IMG/VR virus record: IMGVR_UViG_3300017991_000002
Span: 1 to 64,000 of that record
Strand: one strand, 5' to 3'
Length of the DNA stretch: 64,000 nucleotides
The stretch's first letter is position 1, and every line of letters begins with the position of its first letter. The notes below the pieces were generated by a model. The model was not told the DNA's origin and made no database searches. It saw nothing but the letters and a program-made list of their open reading frames with translations. Both the position numbers and the translations under genes were made by a program. Positions 1,168-61,960 of this stretch are shown in pieces.

Positions 1168-2019
1168 TTATCCCTTCATTCTGTCCTGAAGCATTGAAAT
1201 GCGATGACCAAGTCCTTCCCATTTTCTTACTGACTTGTCCGCATCATGAAACACCTTATCTGCTGTTTTAAACTCTGCTTGCCACTTCTTTTCACTTTCC
1301 GTATCTCCCTTTCTATGGGACATCTTAATGAAGTCCTGGGCAACCTTCTTTGCCCTTTCCGCTTCCATCCTAATACCGTTAGCCTCCATTGCATGATCTA
1401 CCACAGAGTCCATCATATTTTTTACACGACTCATAGTCTCGGGCTCGTCTCGGGCTGCGGCCGCACGCCTACGGTACTGACCAATCTCGGCCGCAGTAAG
1501 GTAAAGATCCATTATAAATTTATATGCCTTCCATATTTCACTTAAGGCTAAAGCCAAAAAAACAGCAGGTATAATCTTCCTCCCGAATTCATACCGGTTA
1601 ATATCCCTGAGACGCTTAGGATCGACAAATCTTCCTTGGTGGTCAACATAAACATAGGGCTTTCCCCGAGATTTCCATTTTTTATACACAAAGGAGGCTG
1701 CCCCTACCGAAGCTCCGATAAGAGACCCCATCAGATACCCTAACAGTCCAAACGCAAGAGCACCCACCCCAACCATCCCAACGCCGCTTCTGACTTTGGA
1801 AAGATTAACTATGGCCCGGCGGCCTGTGAGCATACGCTCTTTCGGGACAGTGCTTCTCGGTCTTTCTTGTCCTATAGCTGTAAGAGTTCCTAGGGCTGCA
1901 CCGACTCCTGCACCGATCTTCAGTCCTTTTACACTTCCCTTACCCAGGCCAACCGCAATTGATCTTGTTAGTGTCGGAACCACCACTTTCCCTTTACGGA
2001 TTTTGGGGTAATGGTACAC
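1168..2019 (-). CDS. Basic protein with Gly/Ala-rich hydrophobic segments, putative virion/ejection protein
   Basis: 283 aa; several Gly-zipper-like segments followed by Lys/Arg clusters. Confidence 0.55.
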   Translation of the reverse strand: MYHYPKIRKGKVVVPTLTRSIAVGLGKGSVKGLKIGAGVGAALGTLTAIGQERPRSTVPKERMLTGRRAIVNLSKVRSGVGMVGVGALAFGLLGYLMGSLIGASVGAASFVYKKWKSRGKPYVYVDHQGRFVDPKRLRDINRYEFGRKIIPAVFLALALSEIWKAYKFIMDLYLTAAEIGQYRRRAAAARDEPETMSRVKNMMDSVVDHAMEANGIRMEAERAKKVAQDFIKMSHRKGDTESEKKWQAEFKTADKVFHDADKSVRKWEGLGHRISMLQDRMKG

Positions 2020-2047
2020 AAGCCGTAGCTTCTCTTCCCGTGCCTTC

Positions 2048-2662
2048 TTATGCTTGGGCTCTTAACTTTATGGCCTTAACAGAAGGAGCAATCCCGGTCG
2101 CTGATGGTCGCATTAAGGCACCCATCACCAACGAACCGTATCGATCCCTCCAATCCTTACCAAACCATCCCTTGTAACGATTGGCGGCAATCGGTCTCTC
2201 TATCCTACCCTTCAACTTACCCGAAAAGGCAGCAGTATATGCAGCCTCGGAAACTCTCCCCAATGTATAGTCAACAAAATTACTGGACATTTTATCCAAT
2301 AATGCAGGCTTCGAGAGCAGGGACATAAGCCCAGGACTTGATAACCCCGAATCTTTAAAGTCCTTCAACTCATCTTTATACATAGAAACGGCAAGGTTAT
2401 CCGGGACAAGGCCACTTATATTTTTCTTCACCACCTTGATCCTTGAGGATCTTGCAAGGGCAGACTTAACGGTTATCTTCCTCGGCCCAACCAACTTACG
2501 GGCCTCTTCAACAGCAATGTCCCACGTCCTCTTCAGGATCTGGTCAATAAGATCGATCATCTGGGCACGGGTCTTGGCGGCTCTATGTTTTCGATACCAA
2601 CCCCTTATCAGCTCGAATTCCGTTCTTTTTTTAGACTTCTTTGCTGCTTCCTGCAGGTTCAT
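2048..2662 (-). CDS. Hypothetical virion-cluster protein
   Basis: 204 aa; N-terminus MNLQE-AA; start overlaps the upstream stop. Confidence 0.6.
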   Translation of the reverse strand: MNLQEAAKKSKKRTEFELIRGWYRKHRAAKTRAQMIDLIDQILKRTWDIAVEEARKLVGPRKITVKSALARSSRIKVVKKNISGLVPDNLAVSMYKDELKDFKDSGLSSPGLMSLLSKPALLDKMSSNFVDYTLGRVSEAAYTAAFSGKLKGRIERPIAANRYKGWFGKDWRDRYGSLVMGALMRPSATGIAPSVKAIKLRAQA

Positions 2663-3276
2663 TACTTATGCTTCTCCCAATACTCTTCGCCTTCCTTCTC
2701 CATCTTATCGAGCCGGGTGTAATAGTCCGGCAGTTCCATCAAATGTGCCTTGGCGATCGCCTTTGAGATAGTGGGATTATCGTGGTGTTCCTTCTTCTCC
2801 ACCTCAATCCCTCGCTTAAGTTCCCGGGCATCAAACTTCCTATCTGGAACATCAGCATGTTTCAAGTCCGAGGCCCGGACGATAGGATCAACATCTTCTT
2901 CCTCTTCGTCCTCTTCCATGCTACCGGCCTTTACAAGCTTGTGGGCAATTTTGTAGACGAACTCCTCGGCCGTCTCCGGATCAATACCATTCTCCACCGC
3001 AAAATTATGGAACTCTTTATCCGATGGCTCAGGATGTGAAGCAATATACTTAATAATCGCTTTTGCCTGATCAGGGGAGACATCCTCATACATGGGAGTA
3101 CGGAAGCCGCCGGGAACCTTATTAAACCTCAGGGCGGAAGCCCGTAGACTTCGAGCAGACCCACCATCGGTTCCTCGCTCCGGGGTTGCCCACATTCCTT
3201 TCCGTTTTTTATATTCCTGCGGGGACTCGAAGCGTCCTGCACCGGACTCGAGTACCGCTTCTCTGATTGAAGCCAT
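2662..3276 (-). CDS. DUF5661-like domain protein
   Basis: C-terminal ELKRGIEVEKKEH...AIAKAHLMELPDYYTRL; N-terminus MASIRE-AVLE. Confidence 0.7.
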   Translation of the reverse strand: MASIREAVLESGAGRFESPQEYKKRKGMWATPERGTDGGSARSLRASALRFNKVPGGFRTPMYEDVSPDQAKAIIKYIASHPEPSDKEFHNFAVENGIDPETAEEFVYKIAHKLVKAGSMEEDEEEEDVDPIVRASDLKHADVPDRKFDARELKRGIEVEKKEHHDNPTISKAIAKAHLMELPDYYTRLDKMEKEGEEYWEKHK

Positions 3277-3381
3277 GTGTTACTCCTTTTTCGTGATGAC
3301 ACACCAATACCGACTCCTTCGTTGGAGCTCGGCATGTGTTCCAACTCGTCCCGACCGCATCGATGACATAATGTCACCCCC

Positions 3382-4284
3382 TTAGAAGCTAAAGGGTTCT
3401 AATGCAGTTGGGGCACTTATTTTTGGTCCACTCGGATACTTTCCGACATTCCTTCCATGGCGAGATGGGGAAACGTTCGAACTGGCGGGCTTCCCGATCG
3501 GCATCTTATCGATCCCGAGGTCCTGAATTGCCATCTGGGCCAGCAACTTGGCGGCACGATCGATAGCAATGCCGGACTTGGCCATCTCAACAGCATGGGT
3601 AATCTTCCGGATCTTCATCGGGTTTCGGATGATTGCCTTGATTGTGTTTCTGACTTCCGCCGGGCTGATGTACATTCCTCGCCGTATTGACTCCTTCAAG
3701 ACAGTGGCAGTAGCGGCTTGCAGCATCTCCCTCGAGTGCCTGGCCTTGAACCACTTAACACCTGCAGCAACCATGGTAGCACCCAGGACCGCAACGAGCG
3801 GTTTCAGCGTCTTGGTAATGTCTGCGATCGGTATCATCCCCCTCTTGAACTTCGAGTCGACTGTTTTAGCAGCAGTAGCCCCTGTTTTGAAATACTCCTC
3901 CGGTCCCATTACCCTGGCCTCTTGTAAACCACCGTTCCTGCGAATGATCCTCCATTGCTCGAGAATAACAGCCCGAGGGTCAGCACTGGAAAGTCTCACC
4001 TTCACCGGTTCATCATCTGCTTCCGCCAGGTAGAGTCCAAAGAGGGAGGCAACGCCTTCTTCATCGATCACTACACAATCCGACAGTAATTGGTCACCGT
4101 CGCCTTCATAAAAGTCCAATAGAAAGAAAAACTCATCCTCGGACAGCCCGCCGTCTACCCCCTCAGCCTCCTCAATGGGGGTCTTGAAGGGGAAGACAAG
4201 GCCGGCACGTTCACCGTGGACGAGATACTCCCCAATGGATCCGATCATGGCGTCGGAAAGATCTACTGGAGTTCTGATCATCAC
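3382..4284 (-). CDS. Putative virion protein, acidic N-half and basic C-half
   Basis: 300 aa; charge switches at GGLQE-AR. Confidence 0.6.
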   Translation of the reverse strand: MMIRTPVDLSDAMIGSIGEYLVHGERAGLVFPFKTPIEEAEGVDGGLSEDEFFFLLDFYEGDGDQLLSDCVVIDEEGVASLFGLYLAEADDEPVKVRLSSADPRAVILEQWRIIRRNGGLQEARVMGPEEYFKTGATAAKTVDSKFKRGMIPIADITKTLKPLVAVLGATMVAAGVKWFKARHSREMLQAATATVLKESIRRGMYISPAEVRNTIKAIIRNPMKIRKITHAVEMAKSGIAIDRAAKLLAQMAIQDLGIDKMPIGKPASSNVSPSRHGRNVGKYPSGPKISAPTALEPFSF

Positions 4285-4352
4285 GTACTCCTTGGTAATT
4301 TTATATAGTCCCGCGGCGGGCCCGGCAATCGGGCCCTGATTTCATTCCGCGT

Positions 4353-5996
4353 TTACTTCCGGGCTTCTTTCTCTGCTTTCTTCTTCGCGCGTCGTTTCTT
4401 TAAAGCTTTGACTCCTTTGTATGCACCTAATCCGGCAGCAAGACCAGCAGCGGCCGTTCCTATGCGAGCTGTTCTTTGCATTTTGGCATAGTCCTTGTCC
4501 GGTATACCAGCCATATAGGACTTTGTCGCAAAACTACCTGCTTTCCTTGCCTGCTTCCGAGTAAGGCCGGATTTCCTAGCCTTCATTTCTGCATCCACAC
4601 CGGTTTTCACGGCTGCCTTATAATGCCCCTTCTGCCTCTTGTACTCTTGCCCGGCTTTAAATGCCTTCTCTCGCGCCTTTTGGCCTATTTTGAAAGCAAG
4701 GTCTTTTTCCTCGAGGTCGTCTTCTTCAACGTCCCCGATACCGAGAATAGCATCTGCCACTTCAGAAGCATCAAGCTCACCAGCAGCAATCCCTTCAATA
4801 ATTCCTTCAGCGGTGCCGAGTATCTCAGCATCCTCCTCAGCGGCCTCAACCATCTCCATGTAATCATAGAGCTGGGTGGCCTCTTCTTCGGTCAACCCAT
4901 CAACGAAAACGTCGACCTGGCTATCCGGTACCTGCATCAGGTTTTCAAACAATTCGAAGATGAGGTCTTCGCTCATGTTTTCTTCACTTTTACCAGACTC
5001 CCTAGCACCAAGCTCCGCACCCTTCTGAAAACCCTTCTGAAATTGTTTCTGAAGAGACCAAGGTCCTTTCTTACCTTTTCTTGTATAAAGGGACTTAGAG
5101 ACACCAGGTTCCTTGGATAGAAGTTTCTTGTATCTCGGGATGGTGTCTTGTTTTGCCTGGTACTTAGCGCCAACACCTACCAATTTCTTGGCCAGCTTCT
5201 TGGGGGCCCCGACTTCCCTACCCATCCTCGTCAAGGTTTGGTGCATCTTCTCCCCAGATTTCTGACCCCGAAATCCCGTAATACCCATTCTCTGTTTCAT
5301 TTTCCTGGCACCCATACCACGAGCCTTCTTATAAAGCTCCATCTTTCGTTCCTTGGAGACCTCTTCAATTGCGCCTTCGCAGAACGGACACACCAGGAAG
5401 TCACCATCGTCATCTTCAAGCAGGAGACCGTCGACGTCGACAAAGGACTCATTGCAGTGTGGACATTCAATAACATCTTCCTGCTGGGATTTTTTGGCTT
5501 TGCGTCGTTTGTACAGCTTCCGAGCCAGTGCAGCCGCGGCAATACCGGCACCAATACCGGCAGCAGTTTTTGGATGGGCTTTGATGGCCCCGCCAGCCTT
5601 ACCTGCAGTCTCTCCGGTTTTACCGAGAAACTCAGCAGCTTTCCGTTTCCGTTCATAACTCCGCATGCGTTTAACATCGGGGTCTACATACTCGTCCAAC
5701 TCGAGTGTACTTTCACAATAAGGACACTCGTAGTACTGTCCCTCATCGTCTTCATAGAGCTGGACATCTTCTTCGTTAAATTCTTGTTCACAAAATGGAC
5801 ATTCGATAATCATTGATCGTTCCTCCATATTTAAAGTAAAAGGTTTCCCTTCTTGTTCTCCTTCTTGTGCGGGTTCGAGTCCTCGTTTCTTTGCAGTAGC
5901 ATAGAAAACTTGTTTTCCTTTCTTGTTTCCATACTGCCGGATCATACTCCGAAGGACATCCTCCCCTCTTCCTTTGTAGTATTTTGAGATTGGCAT
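4353..5996 (-). CDS. Modular virion polyprotein with two acidic C4 Zn-ribbons and basic segments
   Basis: CPFC..CPYC and CPHC..CPFC modules alternate with Lys/Arg-rich segments. Confidence 0.65.
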   Translation of the reverse strand: MPISKYYKGRGEDVLRSMIRQYGNKKGKQVFYATAKKRGLEPAQEGEQEGKPFTLNMEERSMIIECPFCEQEFNEEDVQLYEDDEGQYYECPYCESTLELDEYVDPDVKRMRSYERKRKAAEFLGKTGETAGKAGGAIKAHPKTAAGIGAGIAAAALARKLYKRRKAKKSQQEDVIECPHCNESFVDVDGLLLEDDDGDFLVCPFCEGAIEEVSKERKMELYKKARGMGARKMKQRMGITGFRGQKSGEKMHQTLTRMGREVGAPKKLAKKLVGVGAKYQAKQDTIPRYKKLLSKEPGVSKSLYTRKGKKGPWSLQKQFQKGFQKGAELGARESGKSEENMSEDLIFELFENLMQVPDSQVDVFVDGLTEEEATQLYDYMEMVEAAEEDAEILGTAEGIIEGIAAGELDASEVADAILGIGDVEEDDLEEKDLAFKIGQKAREKAFKAGQEYKRQKGHYKAAVKTGVDAEMKARKSGLTRKQARKAGSFATKSYMAGIPDKDYAKMQRTARIGTAAAGLAAGLGAYKGVKALKKRRAKKKAEKEARK

Positions 5997-6002
5997 TGTT
6001 CC

Positions 6003-6839
6003 TTACCCTGTCCTTTCAATCGATTGTATCTTTGAATCGGGAATCTTGTCAACCGATGGGTATGATTTACTCCGTGCACGATGGGTTGTCACAAAGTATC
6101 CCGTTCCATCTTTCTTGACTGAAACTCCCGAGAATCGTTTCCGTTGTTCCGGCATAAGATTAACATAATAATTACCGTGCCGGTCAGTATTTCCCTTTTC
6201 CTGGAGAGAGATAATGCTCTCTTTTAGCTTTCTCTTTCTCAGCTTCCCCATCCTACCCCGATATTGGACATATCTATAACCCCAAGCCGGAATACTAAGC
6301 AACGCACCCGCGGCTGCAGCAGTTTTTGGGTCTACATGGTAGTGCCCATAAGGCATTCCATGCTTTCGCAATTGCTTCTGCACCTGAGCCGTTGATAATC
6401 CAGCTGCTGCTCCACCGGTCATATAACCTACCAGGGAAGGAGGTCCTTCACCTATTTTCCTGCCTCGTAGTTTCCTGGCCACTGATGAGCCTACATCATA
6501 GCCAAGTCCTGCAGCGAGAGAACCAGTTCCAGCAATTGCACCCGCAGAAGCACCGTGCTTTGCCATATGTTTTGCCATTACTTTGGGATCAGTATTTCCT
6601 CCATACATGTATGAGGGGGCCGATCCGATTGCAGCAGCAGAAAGACCATGCTCACCGGCACGTTTTACTCTATACTGTAACTGTCGACCCGCCCTTCGGA
6701 GAATTGATCGTTCATATAAAAGATCTTCTTTTAACTTCTTCTTGAAAGATGGATCCCTCTTGACCGCAGCCGCGACTCGTTCAAATCGTACTAAGCTAGG
6801 ACTATAATCTATATCCATTCTATTACTCCTCATGTCCAC
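6003..6839 (-). CDS. Putative virion protein with conserved phage C-terminal domain
   Basis: Ends GVSVKKDGTGYFVTTHRARSKSYPSVDKIPDSKIQSIERTG; Gly/Ala-rich middle. Confidence 0.6.
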   Translation of the reverse strand: MDMRSNRMDIDYSPSLVRFERVAAAVKRDPSFKKKLKEDLLYERSILRRAGRQLQYRVKRAGEHGLSAAAIGSAPSYMYGGNTDPKVMAKHMAKHGASAGAIAGTGSLAAGLGYDVGSSVARKLRGRKIGEGPPSLVGYMTGGAAAGLSTAQVQKQLRKHGMPYGHYHVDPKTAAAAGALLSIPAWGYRYVQYRGRMGKLRKRKLKESIISLQEKGNTDRHGNYYVNLMPEQRKRFSGVSVKKDGTGYFVTTHRARSKSYPSVDKIPDSKIQSIERTG

Positions 6840-40530: not shown

Positions 40531-41098
40531 CCGATCCCCTTCCTCTCTTCCTTTCTCTTCCTTTCTCGTCCCTTATTTCCCCACGTACCTGTTTATCGAC
40601 ATTTTCAAGGGTGGTCCGAGAGATATCCAATCCAAGGAGTTCATGACTCGGGGGTCTTACTCTGGTCATCTTCTTCCCCCTTCCCATTCTCAGCCTGCGA
40701 AACAGGCGTTTCGGTTTCTCTTCCTCTCTCCCGTCCTCAATTTCCTCTTCTTGACGACGCACAGCCTCCCTGTTCACTTCATCAACCCACTCTTTCAGAA
40801 CCCTAAACACCTCTAACCGATACTCCTTCGGAAGAGTCACCCCCGGGATCTGGGCTGCTGCTATTACAATCTCCCTTGATCTATTACAGATATAGTCCAA
40901 TGCCCAACTACTCCAGACCATGATAATCCCAGGCCACACTAATAGATCCATTTCAAGGTCGGAACCAACCCATATGAGGCTTATAACTTGAAACAAAAGA
41001 GTGGTGAGAAATAGTGTGTAAGCTACCACACTGTAAAGCCTTCTTACCTTTTCACCTTTATCGAGTTCTCTTTTTATTATACCAAGCCATGTGTCCAT
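40499..41098 (-). CDS. Membrane protein with internal RRLRM
   Basis: Two TM helices. Confidence 0.6.
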   Translation of the reverse strand: MDTWLGIIKRELDKGEKVRRLYSVVAYTLFLTTLLFQVISLIWVGSDLEMDLLVWPGIIMVWSSWALDYICNRSREIVIAAAQIPGVTLPKEYRLEVFRVLKEWVDEVNREAVRRQEEEIEDGREEEKPKRLFRRLRMGRGKKMTRVRPPSHELLGLDISRTTLENVDKQVRGEIRDEKGRERKRGRGSDVYLLCDTLT

Positions 41099-48407: not shown

Positions 48408-49053
48408 CTTTATCGTCCATTACGGACGTTAAGTACCTGATACTGCCATAAAGCTTAATAGAGTCTTCGCCTCTTGCAATGATAAGGGTAAACATATTGA
48501 CCCCGAATTCATGCTCGGTGTTGAACACAATATCCTCGTCCTTATACAAGGCGTTAAGACTTTTCAATAACTTGCCCAAGGCGCTTCTCGCCTCATTTTT
48601 GTATTTCACTATCTTCTGATTAAACCATTCTTTCAGTTTAATCAACCCCTTCTTCATCCCAGCCACGACCCACTCAATACATAGGTCAATAATAATCGAG
48701 GCATAAGGTATTTGAGATGATATCCCTACCTTGGCCAAAATAACCGCAACGTTCGCAGCGGCCAGCAATTTCTTCAGGAACCCGCCAGACGCCAGATTAA
48801 CCAATGCTTCCGTGATCCCATGGCCAAACTCAACCCCCTTATCCTTGATAACGGCAATTATCTCTTCCTTGCTATGCTTGACTATACCATCATTGTTGAG
48901 ATCAACCTTTGATACGTTCTCCGCCACCAATACACAAATATCCCACAGATCCGACAGTATATTCGAACTTTGCCCCCTAAAAAAGGTCATAGCTGTGTTG
49001 ACAAATTCATCCTTACATTCCTGACCAGTGGTCAGGGAGATTGCTGTAGTCAT
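48334..49053 (-). CDS. Hypothetical protein
   Basis: 239 aa with a hydrophobic middle. Confidence 0.6.
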   Translation of the reverse strand: MTTAISLTTGQECKDEFVNTAMTFFRGQSSNILSDLWDICVLVAENVSKVDLNNDGIVKHSKEEIIAVIKDKGVEFGHGITEALVNLASGGFLKKLLAAANVAVILAKVGISSQIPYASIIIDLCIEWVVAGMKKGLIKLKEWFNQKIVKYKNEARSALGKLLKSLNALYKDEDIVFNTEHEFGVNMFTLIIARGEDSIKLYGSIRYLTSVMDDKDEWGDAVGVFEDKIEEIFFGREDE

Positions 49054-49745
49054 TTTCCTGACTCCTTCGATAGTATTTTTAGCTTGCGCCCTCGCAAATG
49101 ATCAGACGGGACAGTTCCTTTTGTCCTCAAGCTTCTGATACAATTATCGATGATTTTACGAAATGAGTCAAGTGAAATATCCTGATTCATGTAAGAATCT
49201 CTAAAAGGATACTTATACCACTGGATGCCAAATCCGGTTGGATTGTAATGAAAATTATCTTTCACCAGATAACAATCTGACTTATGACCTTCATGCCCAA
49301 AGATGACAGCATACTGCCGGATGATTACCTGCCTTCTCTCCTCAAGATCGCACGTACACTTCACTGCACAGCCATGCCACCAATCATCTCCTTCGGTGCT
49401 AAAACCATATTCACTATAAAGGATCCTCATTTGAGCGAGCCAATTTTCCACATGGGACAGGCCTCTAAAGGAGTCATCTATCCTCCTATACTTGGTGTGG
49501 AAACAATGTGCACGATGTGCAAGATCTTGATAAGACCGATGACCGTCATCAACATTATTCCAACCACACGTGCAGTCACCCCACCAATAAGGAAAAATCC
49601 AGAAAGTATCGTTCTCAAATTCATCTTGATAATCAATGCCGGTCACAGGCCACAGCCTTTGAAACTCCTCCTCCCAGCCCTTCCCCCGTGGAATTGATAT
49701 CTCCCCTCGAGAGTTCCCGAGGAGGACGTTTCCAAGATCCGTCAT
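49050..49745 (-). CDS. Cys/His-rich phage protein, tagged
   Basis: PYWWGDCTCG..FGIQWYKYPFRDSYMN; ends GRKLKILSKESGK. Confidence 0.7.
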   Translation of the reverse strand: MTDLGNVLLGNSRGEISIPRGKGWEEEFQRLWPVTGIDYQDEFENDTFWIFPYWWGDCTCGWNNVDDGHRSYQDLAHRAHCFHTKYRRIDDSFRGLSHVENWLAQMRILYSEYGFSTEGDDWWHGCAVKCTCDLEERRQVIIRQYAVIFGHEGHKSDCYLVKDNFHYNPTGFGIQWYKYPFRDSYMNQDISLDSFRKIIDNCIRSLRTKGTVPSDHLRGRKLKILSKESGK

Positions 49746-50296
49746 TTTCTGATCCTTAACTTTCGAAATAATTTTTTCTTTTTCCTTAGGAGTCCAGAAG
49801 TCATTTGCGGAGACATATGAAAGTTCTCAATAAAGGCGACATTGTCACTTGAAGGGGACATACTTATATTGACATTGAAAATATCCATATTCTCAACAAT
49901 ATTGGATTCGTTAACATTAACCGTTCCACAAATACTAAACCCAAACCGTGCTCCATTCCTCGCCATGGCAGTAATCTGGTCACCGCAGGGGGTATTAAGC
50001 ACCCGCACCGTACATCTTACCTTGCCGGAGACCTCCAGGACTAATTCTTCGACCCGATGAGATGTTCTGCAAAGAGGAAGAGTTCTAAAACCGGCCTCCT
50101 CCCCATGGGTAAAAGCCCCAAACTCCTCCCGCATTGAAGATACAGCCCTCTCCAGGACATCTCTCGGATACACACGACCGTTGCCATCGACCCTATCAGC
50201 TTCCAGATTCAGGTACCCTGTCAGTCGACCTTCCCTCTCGCTCATAAATAATCTTCCTCTCCTCACGACAAATCCCGGAGTGGCATATCGTCCCAT
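49742..50296 (-). CDS. Degenerate T4 gp21-like prohead protease, tagged
   Basis: NGRVYPRDVLERAV..TSHRV..VLNTPCG..GFSICG; ends FRKLRIRK. Confidence 0.65.
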   Translation of the reverse strand: MGRYATPGFVVRRGRLFMSEREGRLTGYLNLEADRVDGNGRVYPRDVLERAVSSMREEFGAFTHGEEAGFRTLPLCRTSHRVEELVLEVSGKVRCTVRVLNTPCGDQITAMARNGARFGFSICGTVNVNESNIVENMDIFNVNISMSPSSDNVAFIENFHMSPQMTSGLLRKKKKLFRKLRIRK

Positions 50297-50543
50297 ACTT
50301 CCTACAAATCAAAAAGGTAGCCCCCGGTAATGGGCCTTCACAGCAAGGACAGTGAACATCCGGAACGCACACCCTATCTTCCTTACAAGCAATCATCTGC
50401 CTGCGGAATGACCCATGCCTTACTTTATAATTAAGAAAACTCTCGCTCACAACATTCCTCCCCGACACTGGAAGGGCTTCCAGTGGAGCGATGGTTCTCC
50501 TCCCCCTCAGAAGAATGGAGCCGAAGCGTTCGTGAAATACCAT
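50196..50543 (-). CDS. Small Cys-rich protein (real start uncertain)
   Basis: CPCC..C..C..C in the C-half. Confidence 0.4.
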   Translation of the reverse strand: MVFHERFGSILLRGRRTIAPLEALPVSGRNVVSESFLNYKVRHGSFRRQMIACKEDRVCVPDVHCPCCEGPLPGATFLICRKYGTICHSGICREERKIIYEREGRSTDRVPESGS

Positions 50544-50946
50544 CCCTCCGTCTCTCTACCCTGAGCATACCATCATGTGGCACATCGCCATTCTCATCAA
50601 TACCCCAATAGGTCTCCATAAAATCAGCCAAAGCACAGGAAATAGAAACTGTACGACGTTCTAAATCTCCCATCGACTCAAGCCTTCTCATAAGAATATG
50701 GAGCTTTTCTTTCAGCCTCCTATGTTCAAACACCGCCCTATCCTTTTCTCTGATGACCTGATGTACCTTCTTTTGATGATCCCTGTGGGAATCAACTAAC
50801 AACCTTTCGGCATCTTTAGCCCTCATTTGATACAGTGTATAGTTCCCCTCAAAAAACTTCCTGGCGGCCCTTTGCTGTAAACCATACGATATGGACGCCG
50901 CGCTAACAGCGATCAGAAATACTACCAGAAAAGAAACCATTGGCAC
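50431..50946 (-). CDS. Membrane-anchored coiled-coil protein
   Basis: N-terminal TM helix. Confidence 0.55.
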   Translation of the reverse strand: MPMVSFLVVFLIAVSAASISYGLQQRAARKFFEGNYTLYQMRAKDAERLLVDSHRDHQKKVHQVIREKDRAVFEHRRLKEKLHILMRRLESMGDLERRTVSISCALADFMETYWGIDENGDVPHDGMLRVERRRDGISRTLRLHSSEGEENHRSTGSPSSVGEECCEREFS

Positions 50947-58829: not shown

Positions 58830-61375
58830 TTGCCGGAAAACAAAGCGGAAATAAAGGATACATATCAACGATTCTTCGATTACATGAATGCCGGATATCC
58901 TCTTATCTGGATCCAGACACAGGAGGATGCCCGCGTCATTTCTGAAATATCCCGACATGATAAGGATGAGACGCAGTGGTATGTCTGGGATATTGCCGCC
59001 GGCTTTCGTCAGCTAATCGAGAATGCTCAGGCAGAGGAGATGGAAGACCCAACTGGTCCGATTAAGAAGATTGAATCCCTTCCTGATCGGTCGGTAGTGT
59101 TCTTAAAGGACTTTCATCTTTTCATCACCAACCCGACCGTCTTTCGAATGATGAAGAACCTGATCCCTGTATTGGAGACAACGGAGAAGCATTTAGTGGT
59201 TATTTCCCCCACCGACAAAATGCCGATAGAGATCGAGACGGACTTCGTAATATGGGATTTTCCACTTCCCGATAGGGACGAGCTCGTAAATGAGGCAAAG
59301 AAACTGGCGGAGGATAACGACCTCACAAACATCAATGAGGAGTATGCTGCCTCTGCCGCCGGAATGGGATTAAATCCGGCCAGGAACGCTTTCTCCTTGT
59401 CCTTGGTTACCAGGGGAGGTAAGCTCGATCGTGAGCTTATTGAGGAGCAGAAGAAGGACAACATTCGAAGAGTGGAAGGACTCGAGTGGTTTCCGGTCGT
59501 TGAGGAGAAGGAAGTCGGGGGACTCGACAATATGAAAGATTACTTCAAATCACGTTGTCGAGGATTTACCGATCCGAAGCTTCCACTGCCGAAGGGAGTT
59601 CTGCTTGTTGGTCTTCCCGGCGCCGGCAAGTCGTTGTCTGCCAAGATGGCGGCACATATTTTCCAGACACCGCTCATCAGGTTCGATCTTGGGTCTCTGA
59701 AGGGATCCCTGGTTGGTGAGACGGAGAGCAAGACTCGTAAGGCACTGCAAGTGATCGATGCAAACGCACCGTTGGTGGTGTGGGTGGATGAAAAGTCGAT
59801 CTTGTCCACCTTAAATCCCGTGAACTGCTGGGACACTGAAACAGGTAGTGCTGTCAGCTATCAGCAGCCAAGCCTTGGGAGGAATTCCTTGGAAGGTTCA
59901 GAGGTCAGAGCATACCGTCCAGAACGGACGATGAAGCTCGTAGGGTCCAAGAGGACTCGAAGCGCGGGACAGATAGTTGACTTTTTTGATTAACCTGCTA
60001 TAGTATTAGAAAAGGTTCTTCTAATATTGACTAAAGCAGGAGGTTTTGAAATGTGGTCCAAGAAGTATGATGAATGTGTAAAATGTGGTTCCTCTGAGAG
60101 AAAGCATGTAGGCAGGGGTCTATGTTCCCTTTGTTACTCAAGAGACTGGGGAAATAAAAATGCTGACAAGCTTCGGAAACAACGGCATGAATGGTACATA
60201 AGAAGTGGGGGGAAGAATAGAGCCAGAATATTAAGGGAAGAGCGTTATTATGCAGGTAAAAGGAATCACATTCTGGAGCGAGATGGTTATAAGTGCGTCA
60301 AGTGTGGAGAAGATAGGGTAAGTCAATTGATTGTGCATCATGGAGACGGGAGTGGCAGGGGATCTAAAGAGCACAATAATGAAGACGATAATCTTGTAAC
60401 TTGGTGCCGAAGTTGCCATGCGAGACATCATAGTCCTCATAGAGGTAGGATATACAAGCCAGCTGGGTGGTCAGCTTGTTATTCAGCATGTATTGAATGC
60501 GGAACTACGGAGAGGCCACACGGTAGTAAAGGTTTGTGTAAGACCTGCTATGCCCGTAAGCTAAGAGCTGGTAAGGGTTATATGTGGACAGGATGGTCTT
60601 TTCATTATGAACACTGTATAGACTGTGGGACCACAGAAGTGAAACATCATTCGAAGGGTCTATGCACACGTTGCTATGATAAAAAGCGGCGTGAGGAGGC
60701 CAGAATGAAACGTCAACTATCTGATGATATGATCCGAACTCATGCGAAAGTATGAGAGGTTAATCGGACTCGGATTGACCGTAACATATAAATCCTTGTA
60801 TTTAAAGGGTTTTGGAGATCGAAAAAGCATTGGGAGGAGTGATGTCTTCGTCCAGATCAGACGCTGGAACAACCAGTAATATGTTCTCGGCACTGCTGAC
60901 GTGGATGCAGGAGTCTACGAAACCGCACTTCATCGTGGCAACGTGCAATGAAATTAGTGAATTGCTCGAGATCTCACAAGGTGCCCTCCTCCGTCGGTTT
61001 GATGATATCTTCTTCGTCGATCTTCCCACCCAGAAAGAGCGGGAAGAGATTATCAAGATTATGAACGAGCGGTATGGGACGAAGATACCGGTTAAGATGG
61101 CAAACGATATGCCGAATTGGACAGGTGCCGAAATAGAGCGCTTTGCCAGGGACTTGCTCTTCTGCAATGCCAAGACAAAGGCTGAGATGGATGAGGTCAA
61201 GGACGGAATTCGGTTGATTTACAACCAAAACCAGAATATAATTGAAACACTAAGACGGTGGGCGAAGGTTAACGCTCGCCGAGCGAATGCGTATCTGCCA
61301 GAGGAAGATGCCAGCGCTTCTGATAAGAAGTCGAAACGATCCTTGAGGTATCCCTCACAAACAACCAATGTGTAA
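58830..61375 (+). CDS. Ycf46-like AAA+ ATPase, spliced: join(58830..59789,60815..61375), 506 aa
   Basis: Walker A GLPGAGKS; splicing restores Walker B WVD|EIEKA..SDAGT..LLTWMQE; RRFD; WTGAEIE. Confidence 0.88.
59977..60004 (+). promoter_or_regulatory. Intron-internal sigma70-like promoter
   Basis: TTGACT-16 nt-TATAGT with TG extension. Confidence 0.55.
60051..60755 (+). CDS. Intron-encoded HNH homing endonuclease with three Zn-finger-like repeats
   Basis: CVKCG..VHH.D..N..DNLVTWCRSCHARHH; three C..CG...H..KGLC..CY repeats; AGGAGG RBS before ATG 60051. Confidence 0.85.
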   Translation: MWSKKYDECVKCGSSERKHVGRGLCSLCYSRDWGNKNADKLRKQRHEWYIRSGGKNRARILREERYYAGKRNHILERDGYKCVKCGEDRVSQLIVHHGDGSGRGSKEHNNEDDNLVTWCRSCHARHHSPHRGRIYKPAGWSACYSACIECGTTERPHGSKGLCKTCYARKLRAGKGYMWTGWSFHYEHCIDCGTTEVKHHSKGLCTRCYDKKRREEARMKRQLSDDMIRTHAKV

Positions 61376-61391: not shown

Positions 61392-61754
61392 ATGAGTCAT
61401 ACATCAGATATCAATCTGAAAATAAATTCTATTGAGGCTCTCCGCAGAGTTTGCGACAAGCTCGGTTGGGAGATGAACGAGAATGGTTCTGCTACTTTCT
61501 ATGATGGAAAGAAACGGGACGGTATCACCGTCAAGCTTCCGGGCTGGAGGTATGCCGTCGTTATCAATCGTGAGGAGGGGAAGGTCCTCTTCGACAACTA
61601 CAATGGTAGTTGGGGGAACATTAAACATCTGAATAAGTTAAAGGCACACTACGCGATCGAGTATGGAAAGATCCAAGCTCGAAGGATGGGATACACAACC
61701 GTGTATCAGGAAAACAATGAGGGCGAACTTGTCCTCACGGTTAACGTAGAATAG
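61392..61754 (+). CDS. DUF1257 (Ycf35-like) protein
   Basis: MSH..I..I.S.EALRRVCDKLGW..FDNY.G.WG..LKAHYAIE; typical neighbour of Ycf46-like genes. Confidence 0.8.
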   Translation: MSHTSDINLKINSIEALRRVCDKLGWEMNENGSATFYDGKKRDGITVKLPGWRYAVVINREEGKVLFDNYNGSWGNIKHLNKLKAHYAIEYGKIQARRMGYTTVYQENNEGELVLTVNVE

Positions 61755-61765
61755 AGAGGTGTACG

Positions 61766-61960
61766 ATGGGAAAAAAGATCATTATCTCTGCCAACGAAAA
61801 CACCGGTGATATCAATGTGACAACAGAGGGATTTAAAGGGGCCCAATGTCTTAAGGCCTCGAAATTCCTCGAGGAGGGTCTTGGTGGCGGTAAGATGACA
61901 AAGACCGCTGAATTTTACGAGGCCGAAAAGTTCGATGAGCATGTCCAGCTCAATACCTAA
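61766..61960 (+). CDS. DUF2997 protein
   Basis: G.INVTTEGFKGAQCLKASKFLEEGLG..KTAEFY. Confidence 0.8.
   Translation: MGKKIIISANENTGDINVTTEGFKGAQCLKASKFLEEGLGGGKMTKTAEFYEAEKFDEHVQLNT

What the first reader, a model, noticed from the sequence alone, without database searches (positions are those of the whole stretch)
58830..61375. Group I intron inserted in the Walker B motif of a Ycf46-like AAA gene
Seen: splice junctions can be set exactly (exon GAT 59789 | intron 59790-60814 | GAG 60815), supported by P1 with the U-G pair, an 8-bp P10, a variant P7 and P9. Splicing restores WVDEIEKA in frame. Known: phage group I introns mostly target nucleotide-metabolism, polymerase and structural genes at conserved motifs. 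Inference: an unusual target gene, suggesting this uncharacterised ATPase is conserved and important to the phage.
Basis: partly seen in the sequence, partly recalled or inferred. Interest (0 to 1): 0.65.

Follow-up and report, generated by a model that had tools for sequence, protein, structure and literature searches.

The report
Group I intron splitting phage ATPase gene
A self-splicing (group I) intron carrying its own HNH homing-endonuclease gene interrupts the ATP-hydrolysis motif of an AAA+ ATPase gene in a 205-kb uncultured phage; the call is correct and standard RNA-family scans miss it, but it is an ordinary member of a well-known class of mobile element.

Summary
The AAA+ gene is split at 59789|60815. 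The joined exons align without a gap to uninterrupted homologues (VVWVD|EIEKALGG), and one phage protein profile runs from position 371 to 372 across the join. The 1025-nt insert is a group I intron. It has a 7-bp P1 with a U·G pair at the 5' splice site and a terminal G at 60814. An 8-bp P10 abuts P1. The P, Q, R and S core elements are present, and P3, P7, P8 and P9 covary with related phage introns.

Rfam never detects the element. The P7 3' strand, J8/7 and P9 lie inside the last 14 codons of the HNH gene (60712-60756), because that gene sits in the P8 loop. A model of this 3' core, built only from other phages' introns, finds it as the single significant hit in the window (31.8 bits, E 4e-6).

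Related introns with the same guide sequence interrupt the Walker B codons of other AAA genes. One has the same junction and a homologous HNH gene.

Splicing itself is inferred, not shown. Verdict: a real group I intron, probably subgroup IA, and a new member of a known kind. Interest is modest.

The parts
58830..59789 (+). Exon 1 of the AAA+ ATPase: N-terminal domain, Walker A (GLPGAGKS), and Walker B up to the Asp codon GAT
   Evidence: Pfam AAA profile positions 1-64. PHROG 8638 positions 28-371. Aligns to homologues. Gene callers extend it to a 387-aa read-through into the intron (P0001).
59790..60814 (+). Group I intron, 1025 nt
59783..59810 (+). P1: exon GGUGGAU 59783-89 paired with the internal guide GUCCACC 59804-10, with U59789·G59804. 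The P1 loop holds the P10 strand UCGAUCUU 59796-803.
   Evidence: The same guide and the target GUGGAU| occur in L132, L135, L136, L144, L145 and L147.
59816..59822 (+). P3 5' strand UCCCGUG, paired with 59963-59969 CGCGGGA
   Evidence: Present in the MFE. Four of its seven positions covary among 8 introns.
59825..59867 (+). P4 (CUGCUG 59825-30 with CAGCAG 59862-67) enclosing P5/P5a (59832-59860, exact pairing ambiguous). Contains the P and Q elements.
59873..59892 (+). P6: CC/GG, a tandem U-U internal loop, GGGA/UUCC, and a GGAA loop
   Evidence: Comparative reading against ZC08, L002, L132, L139 and L145. The MFE offers a different pairing.
59893..59907 (+). J6/7 and P7 5' strand (the R element AAGGUUCAGAGGUCA): G59901, bulged A59902, GGUCA 59903-07
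59916..59958 (+). P7.1 (CGUCC-AGAAC-GGACG, 59916-30) and P7.2 (GGGUCC-AAGA-GGACUC, 59943-58), lying between P7 and P3'
   Evidence: MFE. Corresponds to the 56-nt insertion at the same model position in the Rfam alignment of ZC08.
59963..59969 (+). P3 3' strand CGCGGGA
59970..59981 (+). P8 5' strand CAGAUAGUUGAC, paired with 60712-60723
   Evidence: 12 perfect pairs. All seven relatives compared have a P8 that starts at or within one base of P3' and ends at the J8/7 GAUAU motif; P8' abuts AUGAUAU in L136, L145, L135, L144 and L139.
59977..60004 (+). Sigma-70-like promoter TTGACT-16-TATAGT inside L8, upstream of the HNH gene (a consensus match only)
   Evidence: 10 of 12 matches, with TG before the -10 hexamer.
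60051..60755 (+). HNH homing-endonuclease gene in the P8 loop. ATG at 60051 follows AGGAGG 60039-44. Three CxxC...CxxC zinc-ribbon repeats flank the HNH core. The last 14 codons overlap P8', J8/7, P7' and P9.
   Evidence: PHROGs HNH families, E 4.6e-10. Pfam HNH E 0.004, below its cut-off. 37% identical to the intron ORF of L136.
60712..60723 (+). P8 3' strand GUCAACUAUCUG
60724..60735 (+). J8/7 (AUGAUA) and P7 3' strand UGAUCC (the S element)
   Evidence: Model R2 hit at 60718-60764, 31.8 bits, E 4.3e-6. P7 covariation.
60739..60756 (+). P9: CUCAUGC-GAAA-GUAUGAG. The HNH stop codon lies in its 3' strand.
60758..60812 (+). Peripheral P9.1 (GGUUAAUC-GGACUCG-GAUUGACC, 60758-80), conserved GUAACAUA, and P9.2 (AAAUCCUU-GUAUUUA-AAGGGUUU, 60790-812)
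   Evidence: L136 has a covarying P9.1 followed by GUAACAUA.
60814..60814 (+). Terminal guanosine (omega-G) at the 3' splice site
   Evidence: Exon 2 begins at 60815, as P10 and the protein alignments require.
60815..61375 (+). Exon 2 of the AAA+ ATPase: Walker B Glu, then EIEKALGG, sensor 1, arginine finger, lid and C-terminal tail
   Evidence: Pfam AAA positions 74-130. PHROG 8638 positions 372-554. Alignment.

Best explanation
Bases 59790-60814 are a mobile group I intron, probably subgroup IA, inserted between the Asp and Glu codons of the Walker B motif of a classic-clade AAA+ ATPase gene.

Proposed mechanism, inferred from structure:
1. In the pre-mRNA the guide GUCCACC pairs with the exon end GGUGGAU to form P1, with U59789·G59804 at the splice site.
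2. The core helices P3-P8 and P4-P6 fold. This includes a 12-bp P8 that closes over the 730-nt loop holding the HNH gene.
3. An external guanosine bound in P7 attacks after U59789.
4. The adjoining guide bases UCGAUCUU then hold the start of exon 2 (P10). G60814 enters the G site and the exons are ligated, giving ...VVWVD-EIEKALGG...

The HNH protein is presumably made from unspliced or excised RNA, possibly from its own promoter. It would cut or nick intronless alleles near GUGGAU|GAGAUCGAAAA in co-infecting relatives, so that repair copies the intron in.

Shown here: the split gene, exact junction restoration, the helices, and homology and covariation with validated introns. Inferred: catalysis, subgroup, endonuclease activity and homing.
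For: 1. The junction is exact at the protein level. The joined exons align without a gap to intronless homologues. PHROG 8638 runs 371|372 across the join. Pfam AAA is split 1-64 / 74-130.
2. P1 with U·G, a contiguous 8-bp P10 and a terminal G are all present.
3. Bases 59860-59965 are 82.6% identical to Pseudomonas phage ZC08 DNA. That ZC08 element scores 88.9 bits against Rfam Intron_gpI.
4. The P, Q, R and S elements occur in order at only one place in the 64 kb.
5. Across 8 related introns, P3 covaries at 4 positions and P7 at 4 positions. The window has GGUCA/UGAUC where the others have GACUA/UAGUC or GACCA/UGGUC. P8 and P9 differ completely in sequence yet always pair.
6. The unconstrained fold of the ORF-deleted RNA recovers P3, P4, P7.1, P7.2, P8, P9, P9.1 and P9.2. 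The two halves give z-scores of -2.78 and -3.57.
7. A covariance model of J8/7-P7'-P9, built from 21 other phage introns, gives one significant hit in the window at 60718-60764 (31.8 bits, E 4.3e-6). The next best is 10.9 bits.
8. L136 has the same junction (GTG GAT|GAG ATT GAA AAG GCA), a 37%-identical HNH ORF in L8 and the same P3'-P8...P8'-AUGAUAU layout.
Against: - Rfam RF00028 finds nothing here, even at E<=10 on the isolated 5' core. I attribute this to the 730-nt L8 insert, the P7.1/P7.2 insert and the variant P7. I could not test that, because an ORF-deleted sequence cannot be given to that tool.
- P7 has a G·U pair where relatives have A-U.
- The P5 and P6 pairings are not uniquely defined.
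- There is no P2.
- No RNA data are available, so splicing is not demonstrated.
- The sequence-only profile of the S/P9 region was not significant window-wide (E 0.6).
Confidence: 0.88

Rival explanations
1. A decayed intron, or a bare endonuclease insertion, that no longer splices. The ATPase would then be made as two polypeptides that assemble, or be inactive. The two products would be the 387-aa read-through of exon 1 and a C-terminal piece starting at the TTG at 60812 or the ATG at 60842. This would be a 'gene in pieces' like nrdA of phage Aeh1.
For: Rfam does not recognise the element. Gene callers report a 387-aa product (P0001). GGAGG at 60833-37 precedes the ATG at 60842. The ZC08 paper (PMC5418858) discusses such split genes.
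Against: Every core helix is intact and supported by compensatory changes, including the G-C pair and bulged A of P7. P1 and P10 template the join to the base. The break falls inside the beta-sheet core of the AAA fold, between the Walker B Asp and Glu, where two separate chains are unlikely to work. The GGAGG is simply the conserved Gly-Gly codons also present in intronless homologues.
Confidence: 0.07
2. A group I intron with a different core arrangement. P8 would be 59985-96 paired with 60757-68, and P7' would be UUGACC at 60775-80. Under this model the whole HNH ORF lies in L8 and does not overlap the core.
For: There is a 12-pair complementarity (10 Watson-Crick plus 2 G·U) between 59985-96 and 60757-68, and GGUCAG can pair with UUGACC (by eye).
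Against: Both segments are better explained as the local hairpin P9.1, which is present in the MFE and covaries with L136. The CM hit and the J8/7 consensus AUGAUAU place P7' at 60730-35. This model would leave 15 nt between P3' and P8, unlike all relatives.
Confidence: 0.03
3. An assembly chimera or a pseudogene.
For: The contig is a metagenome assembly.
Against: The same sequence is held as two public records, the IMG/VR record UViG_3300017991_000002 and the JGI contig Ga0180433_10000036. Their lengths are nearly the same (205,367 and 205,369 nt), so they may be one assembly. Both exons are open and conserved. Independent samples show the same architecture in related genes (L136/L141, L138/L145, L132).
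Confidence: 0.02

Closest known systems
Group I intron in the RNA polymerase subunit 2 gene of Pseudomonas phage ZC08 (Schitoviridae), L001:2911-3176
   Same: It is 82.6% identical over the P4'-P6-P7-P7.1 core. It has the same P/Q/R/S elements, P7.1/P7.2 inserts and a GAAA-capped P9, and it scores 88.9 bits against Rfam. It also sits directly after a catalytic Asp codon (..SVHD).
   Different: The host gene differs. ZC08 has a P2 and a canonical P7 (GACUA/UAGUC). Its endonuclease (HNH_3-like, 209 aa) lies after P9 rather than in L8. The published description treats it only as a homing-endonuclease insertion (PMC5418858).
Metagenomic intron L136/L141 (Ga0116123) in another AAA gene
   Same: Same guide GUCCAC and same junction GUG GAU|GAG AUY GAA AAR GCA (Walker B D|E). 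It has a homologous HNH gene (37% identity, E 4e-33) in L8, the same P3'-P8 / P8'-AUGAUAU layout, and P9.1 followed by GUAACAUA.
   Different: It has a canonical P7, a shorter P8 (7 bp), no P7.1, no P9.2 and no evident P10. The endonuclease has two zinc ribbons rather than three. The host protein differs downstream of the junction.
Phage group I introns with HNH endonucleases, such as the Bacillus phage SPO1/SP82 DNA polymerase introns (I-HmuI/II) and the IA2 intron of cyanophage Pf-WMP3 DNA polymerase (I-PfoP3I, PMC3428280), and the T4 td, nrdB and nrdD introns
   Same: Each is a self-splicing intron plus an endonuclease gene in a peripheral loop, inserted at a highly conserved catalytic motif of an essential phage gene. 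The endonuclease gene's 3' end can overlap core structure. This comparison rests on my own knowledge and on the abstract of PMC3428280.
   Different: The target here is an AAA+ ATPase of unknown role rather than a nucleotide-metabolism or polymerase gene. No sequence comparison with those introns was made here.
Group I introns of jumbo gut ('Jug') phages (PMC12880540)
   Same: [quoted passage not shown] Splicing was confirmed by metatranscriptome reads for 37 of 76 predicted introns in three genomes.
   Different: Those introns average about 206 nt and were found with subtype covariance models. This one is 1025 nt, carries its endonuclease inside P8 and escapes the Rfam model.

Membership tests
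Group I intron | P1 helix between the exon end and an internal guide, with U·G at the 5' splice site | tested here: met
   GGUGGAU 59783-89 pairs with GUCCACC 59804-10, with U59789·G59804.
Group I intron | Terminal guanosine at the 3' splice site, with the 3' exon aligned on the guide (P10) | tested here: met
   G60814 is terminal. The 8-bp P10 (59796-803 with 60815-22) is contiguous with P1.
Group I intron | Conserved core: P3-P8 and P4-P6 domains with P, Q, R and S elements in order | tested here: met
   The elements are at 59823, 59860, 59897 and 60726, the only such cluster in the window. The helices appear in the MFE. Covariation in P3, P7, P8 and P9 is shown.
Group I intron | Guanosine-binding P7 with a conserved G-C pair and a bulged nucleotide | tested here: met
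   G59901-C60735, bulged A59902 and G59903-C60734 occupy the same positions as in ZC08 and six other introns. The mapping to the G site rests on established knowledge of the Tetrahymena and Azoarcus introns. Binding itself is not testable here.
Group I intron | Score at or above the Rfam RF00028 gathering threshold | tested here: not met
   No hit at the gathering threshold or at E<=10. Close relatives score 56-111 bits. The likely causes are the 730-nt L8 insert and the P7.1/P7.2 insert. An ORF-deleted sequence could not be submitted.
Group I intron | Independent model of J8/7-P7'-P9 built from other introns | tested here: met
   Model R2 gives 31.8 bits, E 4.3e-6 at 60718-60764. It is the unique significant hit.
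Group I intron | GTP-dependent self-splicing | not testable with these tools
   Needs in vitro transcription and splicing, or RNA reads.
Subgroup IA | Extra helices P7.1/P7.2 between P7 and P3' | tested here: met
   Hairpins at 59916-30 and 59943-58. ZC08 has a 56-nt insertion at that model position. No subgroup-specific models were available, so IA1, IA2 and IA3 cannot be told apart.
HNH homing endonuclease | HNH catalytic motif | tested here: met
   PHROGs HNH families, E 4.6e-10. The motif reads HHGDG...NLVTWCRSCHARHH. Pfam HNH scores 17.7 bits against a cut-off of 21.4. NCBIfam finds an IscB-like HNH at E 1.5e-7.
HNH homing endonuclease | Cleaves the intronless allele at or near the insertion site | not testable with these tools
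   Intronless alleles exist (P0003, L148, L150). Cleavage needs an assay.
AAA+ ATPase, classic clade | Walker A, Walker B (hhhhDE) and second region of homology, matching Pfam AAA | tested here: met
   PF00004 matches across both exons. Intact P0003 scores E 1.1e-21. CDC48, PAN and FtsH are the best NCBIfam matches, all far below their cut-offs.
Ycf46 | Orthology to cyanobacterial or plastid Ycf46 | not tested
   The only support is JGI's generic label 'SpoVK/Ycf46/Vps4 family' on distant homologues. No Ycf46-specific model or sequence was compared.

The most novel reading that the evidence does not exclude
This may be an intron lineage, defined by the guide GUCCAC, that moves by guide-directed reverse splicing as well as by endonuclease homing. 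Related introns sit after GUGGAU in unrelated genes, such as a tail-like gene in L135. Within one AAA family they occupy two sites 4 nt apart: after GUG GAU| (V-D) in the window and L136, and after G UGG AU| (W-I) in L132 and L145. In each case the site tracks where the exon spells GUGGAU. Intronless alleles carry GUGGAU only at the W-I site.
Probability: 0.15. Interest if true: 0.6.

Novelty: new member of a known kind. Interest (0 to 1): 0.35.

Why it matters
- **Annotation.** Public gene calls give a truncated 387-aa ATPase, a stray HNH gene and an orphan 187-aa ORF. The real product is a 506-aa AAA+ ATPase.
- **Method.** An intron with its endonuclease in P8, extra P7.1/P7.2 helices and a variant P7 is invisible to Rfam even at permissive thresholds. 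Intron counts in phage metagenomes are therefore underestimates. Split conserved motifs combined with family-specific half-models can recover such cases.
- **Biology.** Repeated invasion of the Walker B codons marks this ATPase, which sits in a conserved AAA / 120-aa ORF / DUF2997 module, as conserved among co-infecting phages. This says nothing yet about what the ATPase does.

Tried and rejected
- **Rfam.** I scanned the whole window, 59700-60900, 59775-60035 and 59783-59971. Intron_gpI never appeared.
- **First P8/P7' model.** My first hand model (P8 = 59985-96 with 60757-68, P7' = 60775-80) was dropped. A second idea, that the S-like GAUAGUUGAC at 59972-81 is P7', was also dropped. That segment is the P8 5' strand, perfectly complementary to 60712-23.
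- **3'-core models.** The sequence-only nhmmer profile of the S/P9 region gave E 0.6 at the right place and E 0.1 at an unrelated site, 40888. No Q or R element lies near 40888, so that hit is chance. Model R1, built from a mis-registered alignment, had no base pairs and was not used.
- **Relatives in viral contigs.** Searches with the ATPase and with the HNH protein returned only the source contig.
- **Intronless allele DNA.** DNA of the closest intronless allele (P0003) could not be fetched.
- **Hairpin over the HNH ribosome-binding site.** The hairpin 59994-60040 is not better than shuffled sequence (z -1.13).
- **Literature.** A search for introns in Walker B motifs returned only irrelevant mitochondrial papers.
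- **Cryptic 5' splice site.** The upstream GGUGGU at 59774-79 can pair with the guide, but it puts U opposite U rather than U·G, so it is not a competent splice site.
Full report
**The gene is split**

The ORF at 58830-59993 carries an N-terminal domain, Walker A (GLPGAGKS) and the start of Walker B (VVWVD), then runs on into unrelated sequence. A second ORF (60812-61375) begins EIEKALGG. Pfam AAA matches profile positions 1-64 in the first piece and 74-130 in the second. PHROG 8638 matches positions 28-371 and then 372-554.

I joined 58830-59789 to 60815-61375 in a script. The result is a 506-residue product with no internal stop. It aligns without any gap at the join to uninterrupted homologues of 470-550 residues. 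The closest is P0003 (503 aa, 64% identity), which reads VVWIDEIEKSLGGVMSSSRSDAGTTSNMF. P0003 has the same neighbours as the window gene: a 145-aa ORF upstream, then a 120-aa ORF and a DUF2997 ORF downstream. It is therefore an intronless allele in a related phage.

The window is the start of a 205-kb IMG/VR contig, also held as Ga0180433_10000036.

**Splice-site signals**

- The exon end GGUGGAU (59783-89) pairs with GUCCACC (59804-10). The last exon base, U59789, lies opposite G59804.
- The eight guide bases just upstream, UCGAUCUU (59796-803), pair with the first eight exon-2 bases, GAGAUCGA (60815-22).
- P1 and P10 are therefore contiguous on the guide and template the ligation of 59789 to 60815.
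- The last intron base is G60814.
- Bases 59790 and 60815 are both G, so a +1 shift of both sites would give the same mRNA. Only the stated sites have U·G at -1.

**Why it is a group I intron although Rfam is silent**

Rfam gives nothing in the window at the gathering threshold, and nothing for Intron_gpI at E<=10 on three sub-ranges.

However, blastn found 82.6% identity between 59860-59965 and an unannotated stretch of Pseudomonas phage ZC08. That stretch lies just after an RNA polymerase ORF ending ..SVHD. It scores 88.9 bits against Rfam Intron_gpI across the full model, with a 56-nt insertion between P7 and P3'.

A motif taken from the shared core (GCAGCCAAGC...GGTTCAGAG) occurs in more than 120 viral contigs. 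Of the 20 loci I scanned with Rfam, 14 carry at least one Intron_gpI hit, scoring 56-111 bits.

In the window, the classical P, Q, R and S elements occur together and in order only once, at 59823, 59860, 59897 and 60726.

**The core structure, revised**

- After P1 there is no P2.
- P3 is UCCCGUG (59816-22) paired with CGCGGGA (59963-69).
- P4 is CUGCUG paired with CAGCAG.
- P6 is a GGAA-capped stem with a tandem U-U loop shared with ZC08.
- The R element supplies the P7 5' strand: G59901, bulged A59902, then GGUCA.
- Two hairpins, P7.1 and P7.2, follow before P3'. This is the hallmark of subgroup IA.
- Directly after P3', CAGAUAGUUGAC (59970-81) is perfectly complementary to GUCAACUAUCUG (60712-23). 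This 12-bp P8 has a loop containing the HNH gene. By my arithmetic, a perfect 12-mer partner somewhere in about 850 nt is expected about 5e-5 times.
- P8' is followed by AUGAUA (J8/7) and UGAUCC (P7'), then CUCAUGC-GAAA-GUAUGAG (P9), then P9.1 and P9.2, then U and G60814.
- The last 14 codons of the endonuclease gene and its stop codon therefore encode P8', J8/7, P7' and P9.

An unconstrained fold of the RNA, with the L8 interior replaced by GAAA, returns P3, P4, P7.1, P7.2, P8, P9, P9.1 and P9.2. The two halves fold better than shuffles, with z-scores of -2.78 and -3.57.

**Comparative support**

A scan for the guide plus J1/3 plus P3/P4 pattern found further relatives in viral and JGI metagenome contigs. 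For eight introns I tabulated the helices and checked every pair.

- P3 keeps pairing while four positions change on both sides.
- P7 keeps the G-C pair and the bulge while four positions covary. The window has G·U, U-A and C-G where most others have A-U, C-G and U-A. Position 1 alternates between G-C and A-U.
- P8 and P9 share no sequence across the set, yet always pair.
- P8 starts at or within one base of P3' in every relative, and it is always followed by the J8/7 motif (AUGAUAU, UGAUGAUAU or AAGAUAU).

As an independent test, I built a covariance model of J8/7-P7'-P9 from 21 other phage introns, none from this contig. I ran it unfiltered over both strands of the window. The only significant hit is 60718-60764 (31.8 bits, E 4.3e-6); the next best is 10.9 bits.

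**The same lineage in other AAA genes**

- **L136/L141** carry an AAA-type gene reading ..ACIVFVD|EIEKAFGG. The DNA junction is the same (GTG GAT|GAG ATT GAA AAG GCA). An HNH gene 37% identical to the window's lies in L8, and P9.1 followed by GUAACAUA is conserved.
- **L132** is a 65%-identical orthologue. It is interrupted in Walker B by a related intron, but after G TGG AT, 4 nt upstream. The contig ends inside P7.2.
- **L145/L138** are a 28%-identical family member. They carry a 344-nt ORF-less relative at that upstream site. The joined exons there read WIGEVEKG, with Gly in place of the Walker B Asp, which I cannot explain.
- **Intronless alleles L148 and L150** read GTG TGG ATY GAY GAG.
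- The guide GUCCAC is also found after GUGGAU in a tail-like gene (L135) and in other genes.

**The endonuclease**

ATG 60051 is preceded by AGGAGG. The protein (234 aa) matches HNH families in PHROGs (E 4.6e-10) and, weakly, in Pfam. It has three CxxC...CxxC zinc-ribbon repeats.

A near-consensus sigma-70-type promoter (TTGACT-16-TATAGT, 59977-60004) lies in L8. It is only a consensus match. The hairpin covering the ribosome-binding site is not significant.

**Comparison with what is known**

The architecture is a self-splicing intron, an HNH gene in a peripheral loop, and insertion at a catalytic motif. That is the textbook phage group I intron. Recent work reports thousands of group I introns in jumbo phages interrupting many genes (PMC12880540). 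I found no report of one in this ATPase family or in a Walker B motif.

The ZC08 relative was published only as an endonuclease insertion (PMC5418858).

The 'Ycf46-like' label rests only on generic COG-style names of distant homologues. The protein is a classic-clade AAA+ ATPase of unknown role.

**Verdict**

The finding is correct in substance. The helix map is revised and the Rfam miss is documented. It is a new member of a known kind, with modest interest. Splicing and homing remain to be shown experimentally.

Noticed in passing
L001:1909-4064 (Pseudomonas phage ZC08, NC_048639.1 about 48701-50856): The RNA polymerase subunit 2 gene is interrupted straight after ..SVHD, the catalytic Asp of the T7-like motif C, by an Rfam-validated group I intron (2911-3176). 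A 209-aa HNH_3-like ORF sits after P9. Exon 2 seems to resume near 3883 (..FAVHPNNALD). The record annotates none of this, and the paper calls it an endonuclease insertion.
   Followed up: partly
L001:4115-6058: A second split gene in ZC08: a 66-aa Walker A piece, an HNH gene (4438-5061) and a 250-aa piece starting near Walker B (LILLDEF). There is no Rfam intron hit. It could be another unrecognised intron or a true gene in pieces.
   Followed up: no
window 59985-59996 and 60757-60768: UUUGAUUAACCU in the P8 loop can pair (10 Watson-Crick plus 2 G·U) with the 5' strand of P9.1. This would be a pseudoknot, or an alternative fold that competes with P9.1. No explanation yet.
   Followed up: partly
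window 59977-60004: A sigma-70-like promoter TTGACT-16-TATAGT (10 of 12 matches, TG before the -10 hexamer) lies inside the intron. It overlaps the P8 5' strand, 47 nt upstream of the HNH start codon. It may allow endonuclease expression independent of the host gene.
   Followed up: partly
window 60051-60755: The HNH protein carries three near-identical CxxC-x10/11-CxxC zinc-ribbon repeats (CVKCG..CSLC, CIECG..CKTC, CIDCG..CTRC), one before and two after the HNH core. The L136 homologue has two.
   Followed up: partly
L145:1380-1860 and L138 (oriented as): A 344-nt ORF-less relative of the intron sits 4 nt upstream in a distant member of the same ATPase family. The inferred spliced product reads WIGEVEKG, so the Walker B Asp is replaced by Gly. 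Either the gene is decaying or the 3' splice site is not where P9 and the frame suggest.
   Followed up: partly
L010 (IMGVR GVMAG-M-3300020716-5) 1412-6486; L019 148-1763: Dense runs of group I introns: eight Rfam hits within about 5 kb of a giant-virus MAG contig, and four within 1.7 kb of another viral contig.
   Followed up: no
window 61392-61960; L150 3922-4507: The ATPase gene is followed by a ~120-aa ORF (117-120 aa) and a DUF2997 ORF (Pfam E 1.1e-7). The contigs of P0003 and P0007 show the same order. This is a conserved three-gene module of unknown function.
   Followed up: partly
window 58830-59993: Public protein collections hold a 387-aa gene call (P0001) that reads from exon 1 through the intron's P1-P7.2 region. 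The tail VNCW..QQPSLG is translated ribozyme core. The same artefact appears in P0002.
   Followed up: yes
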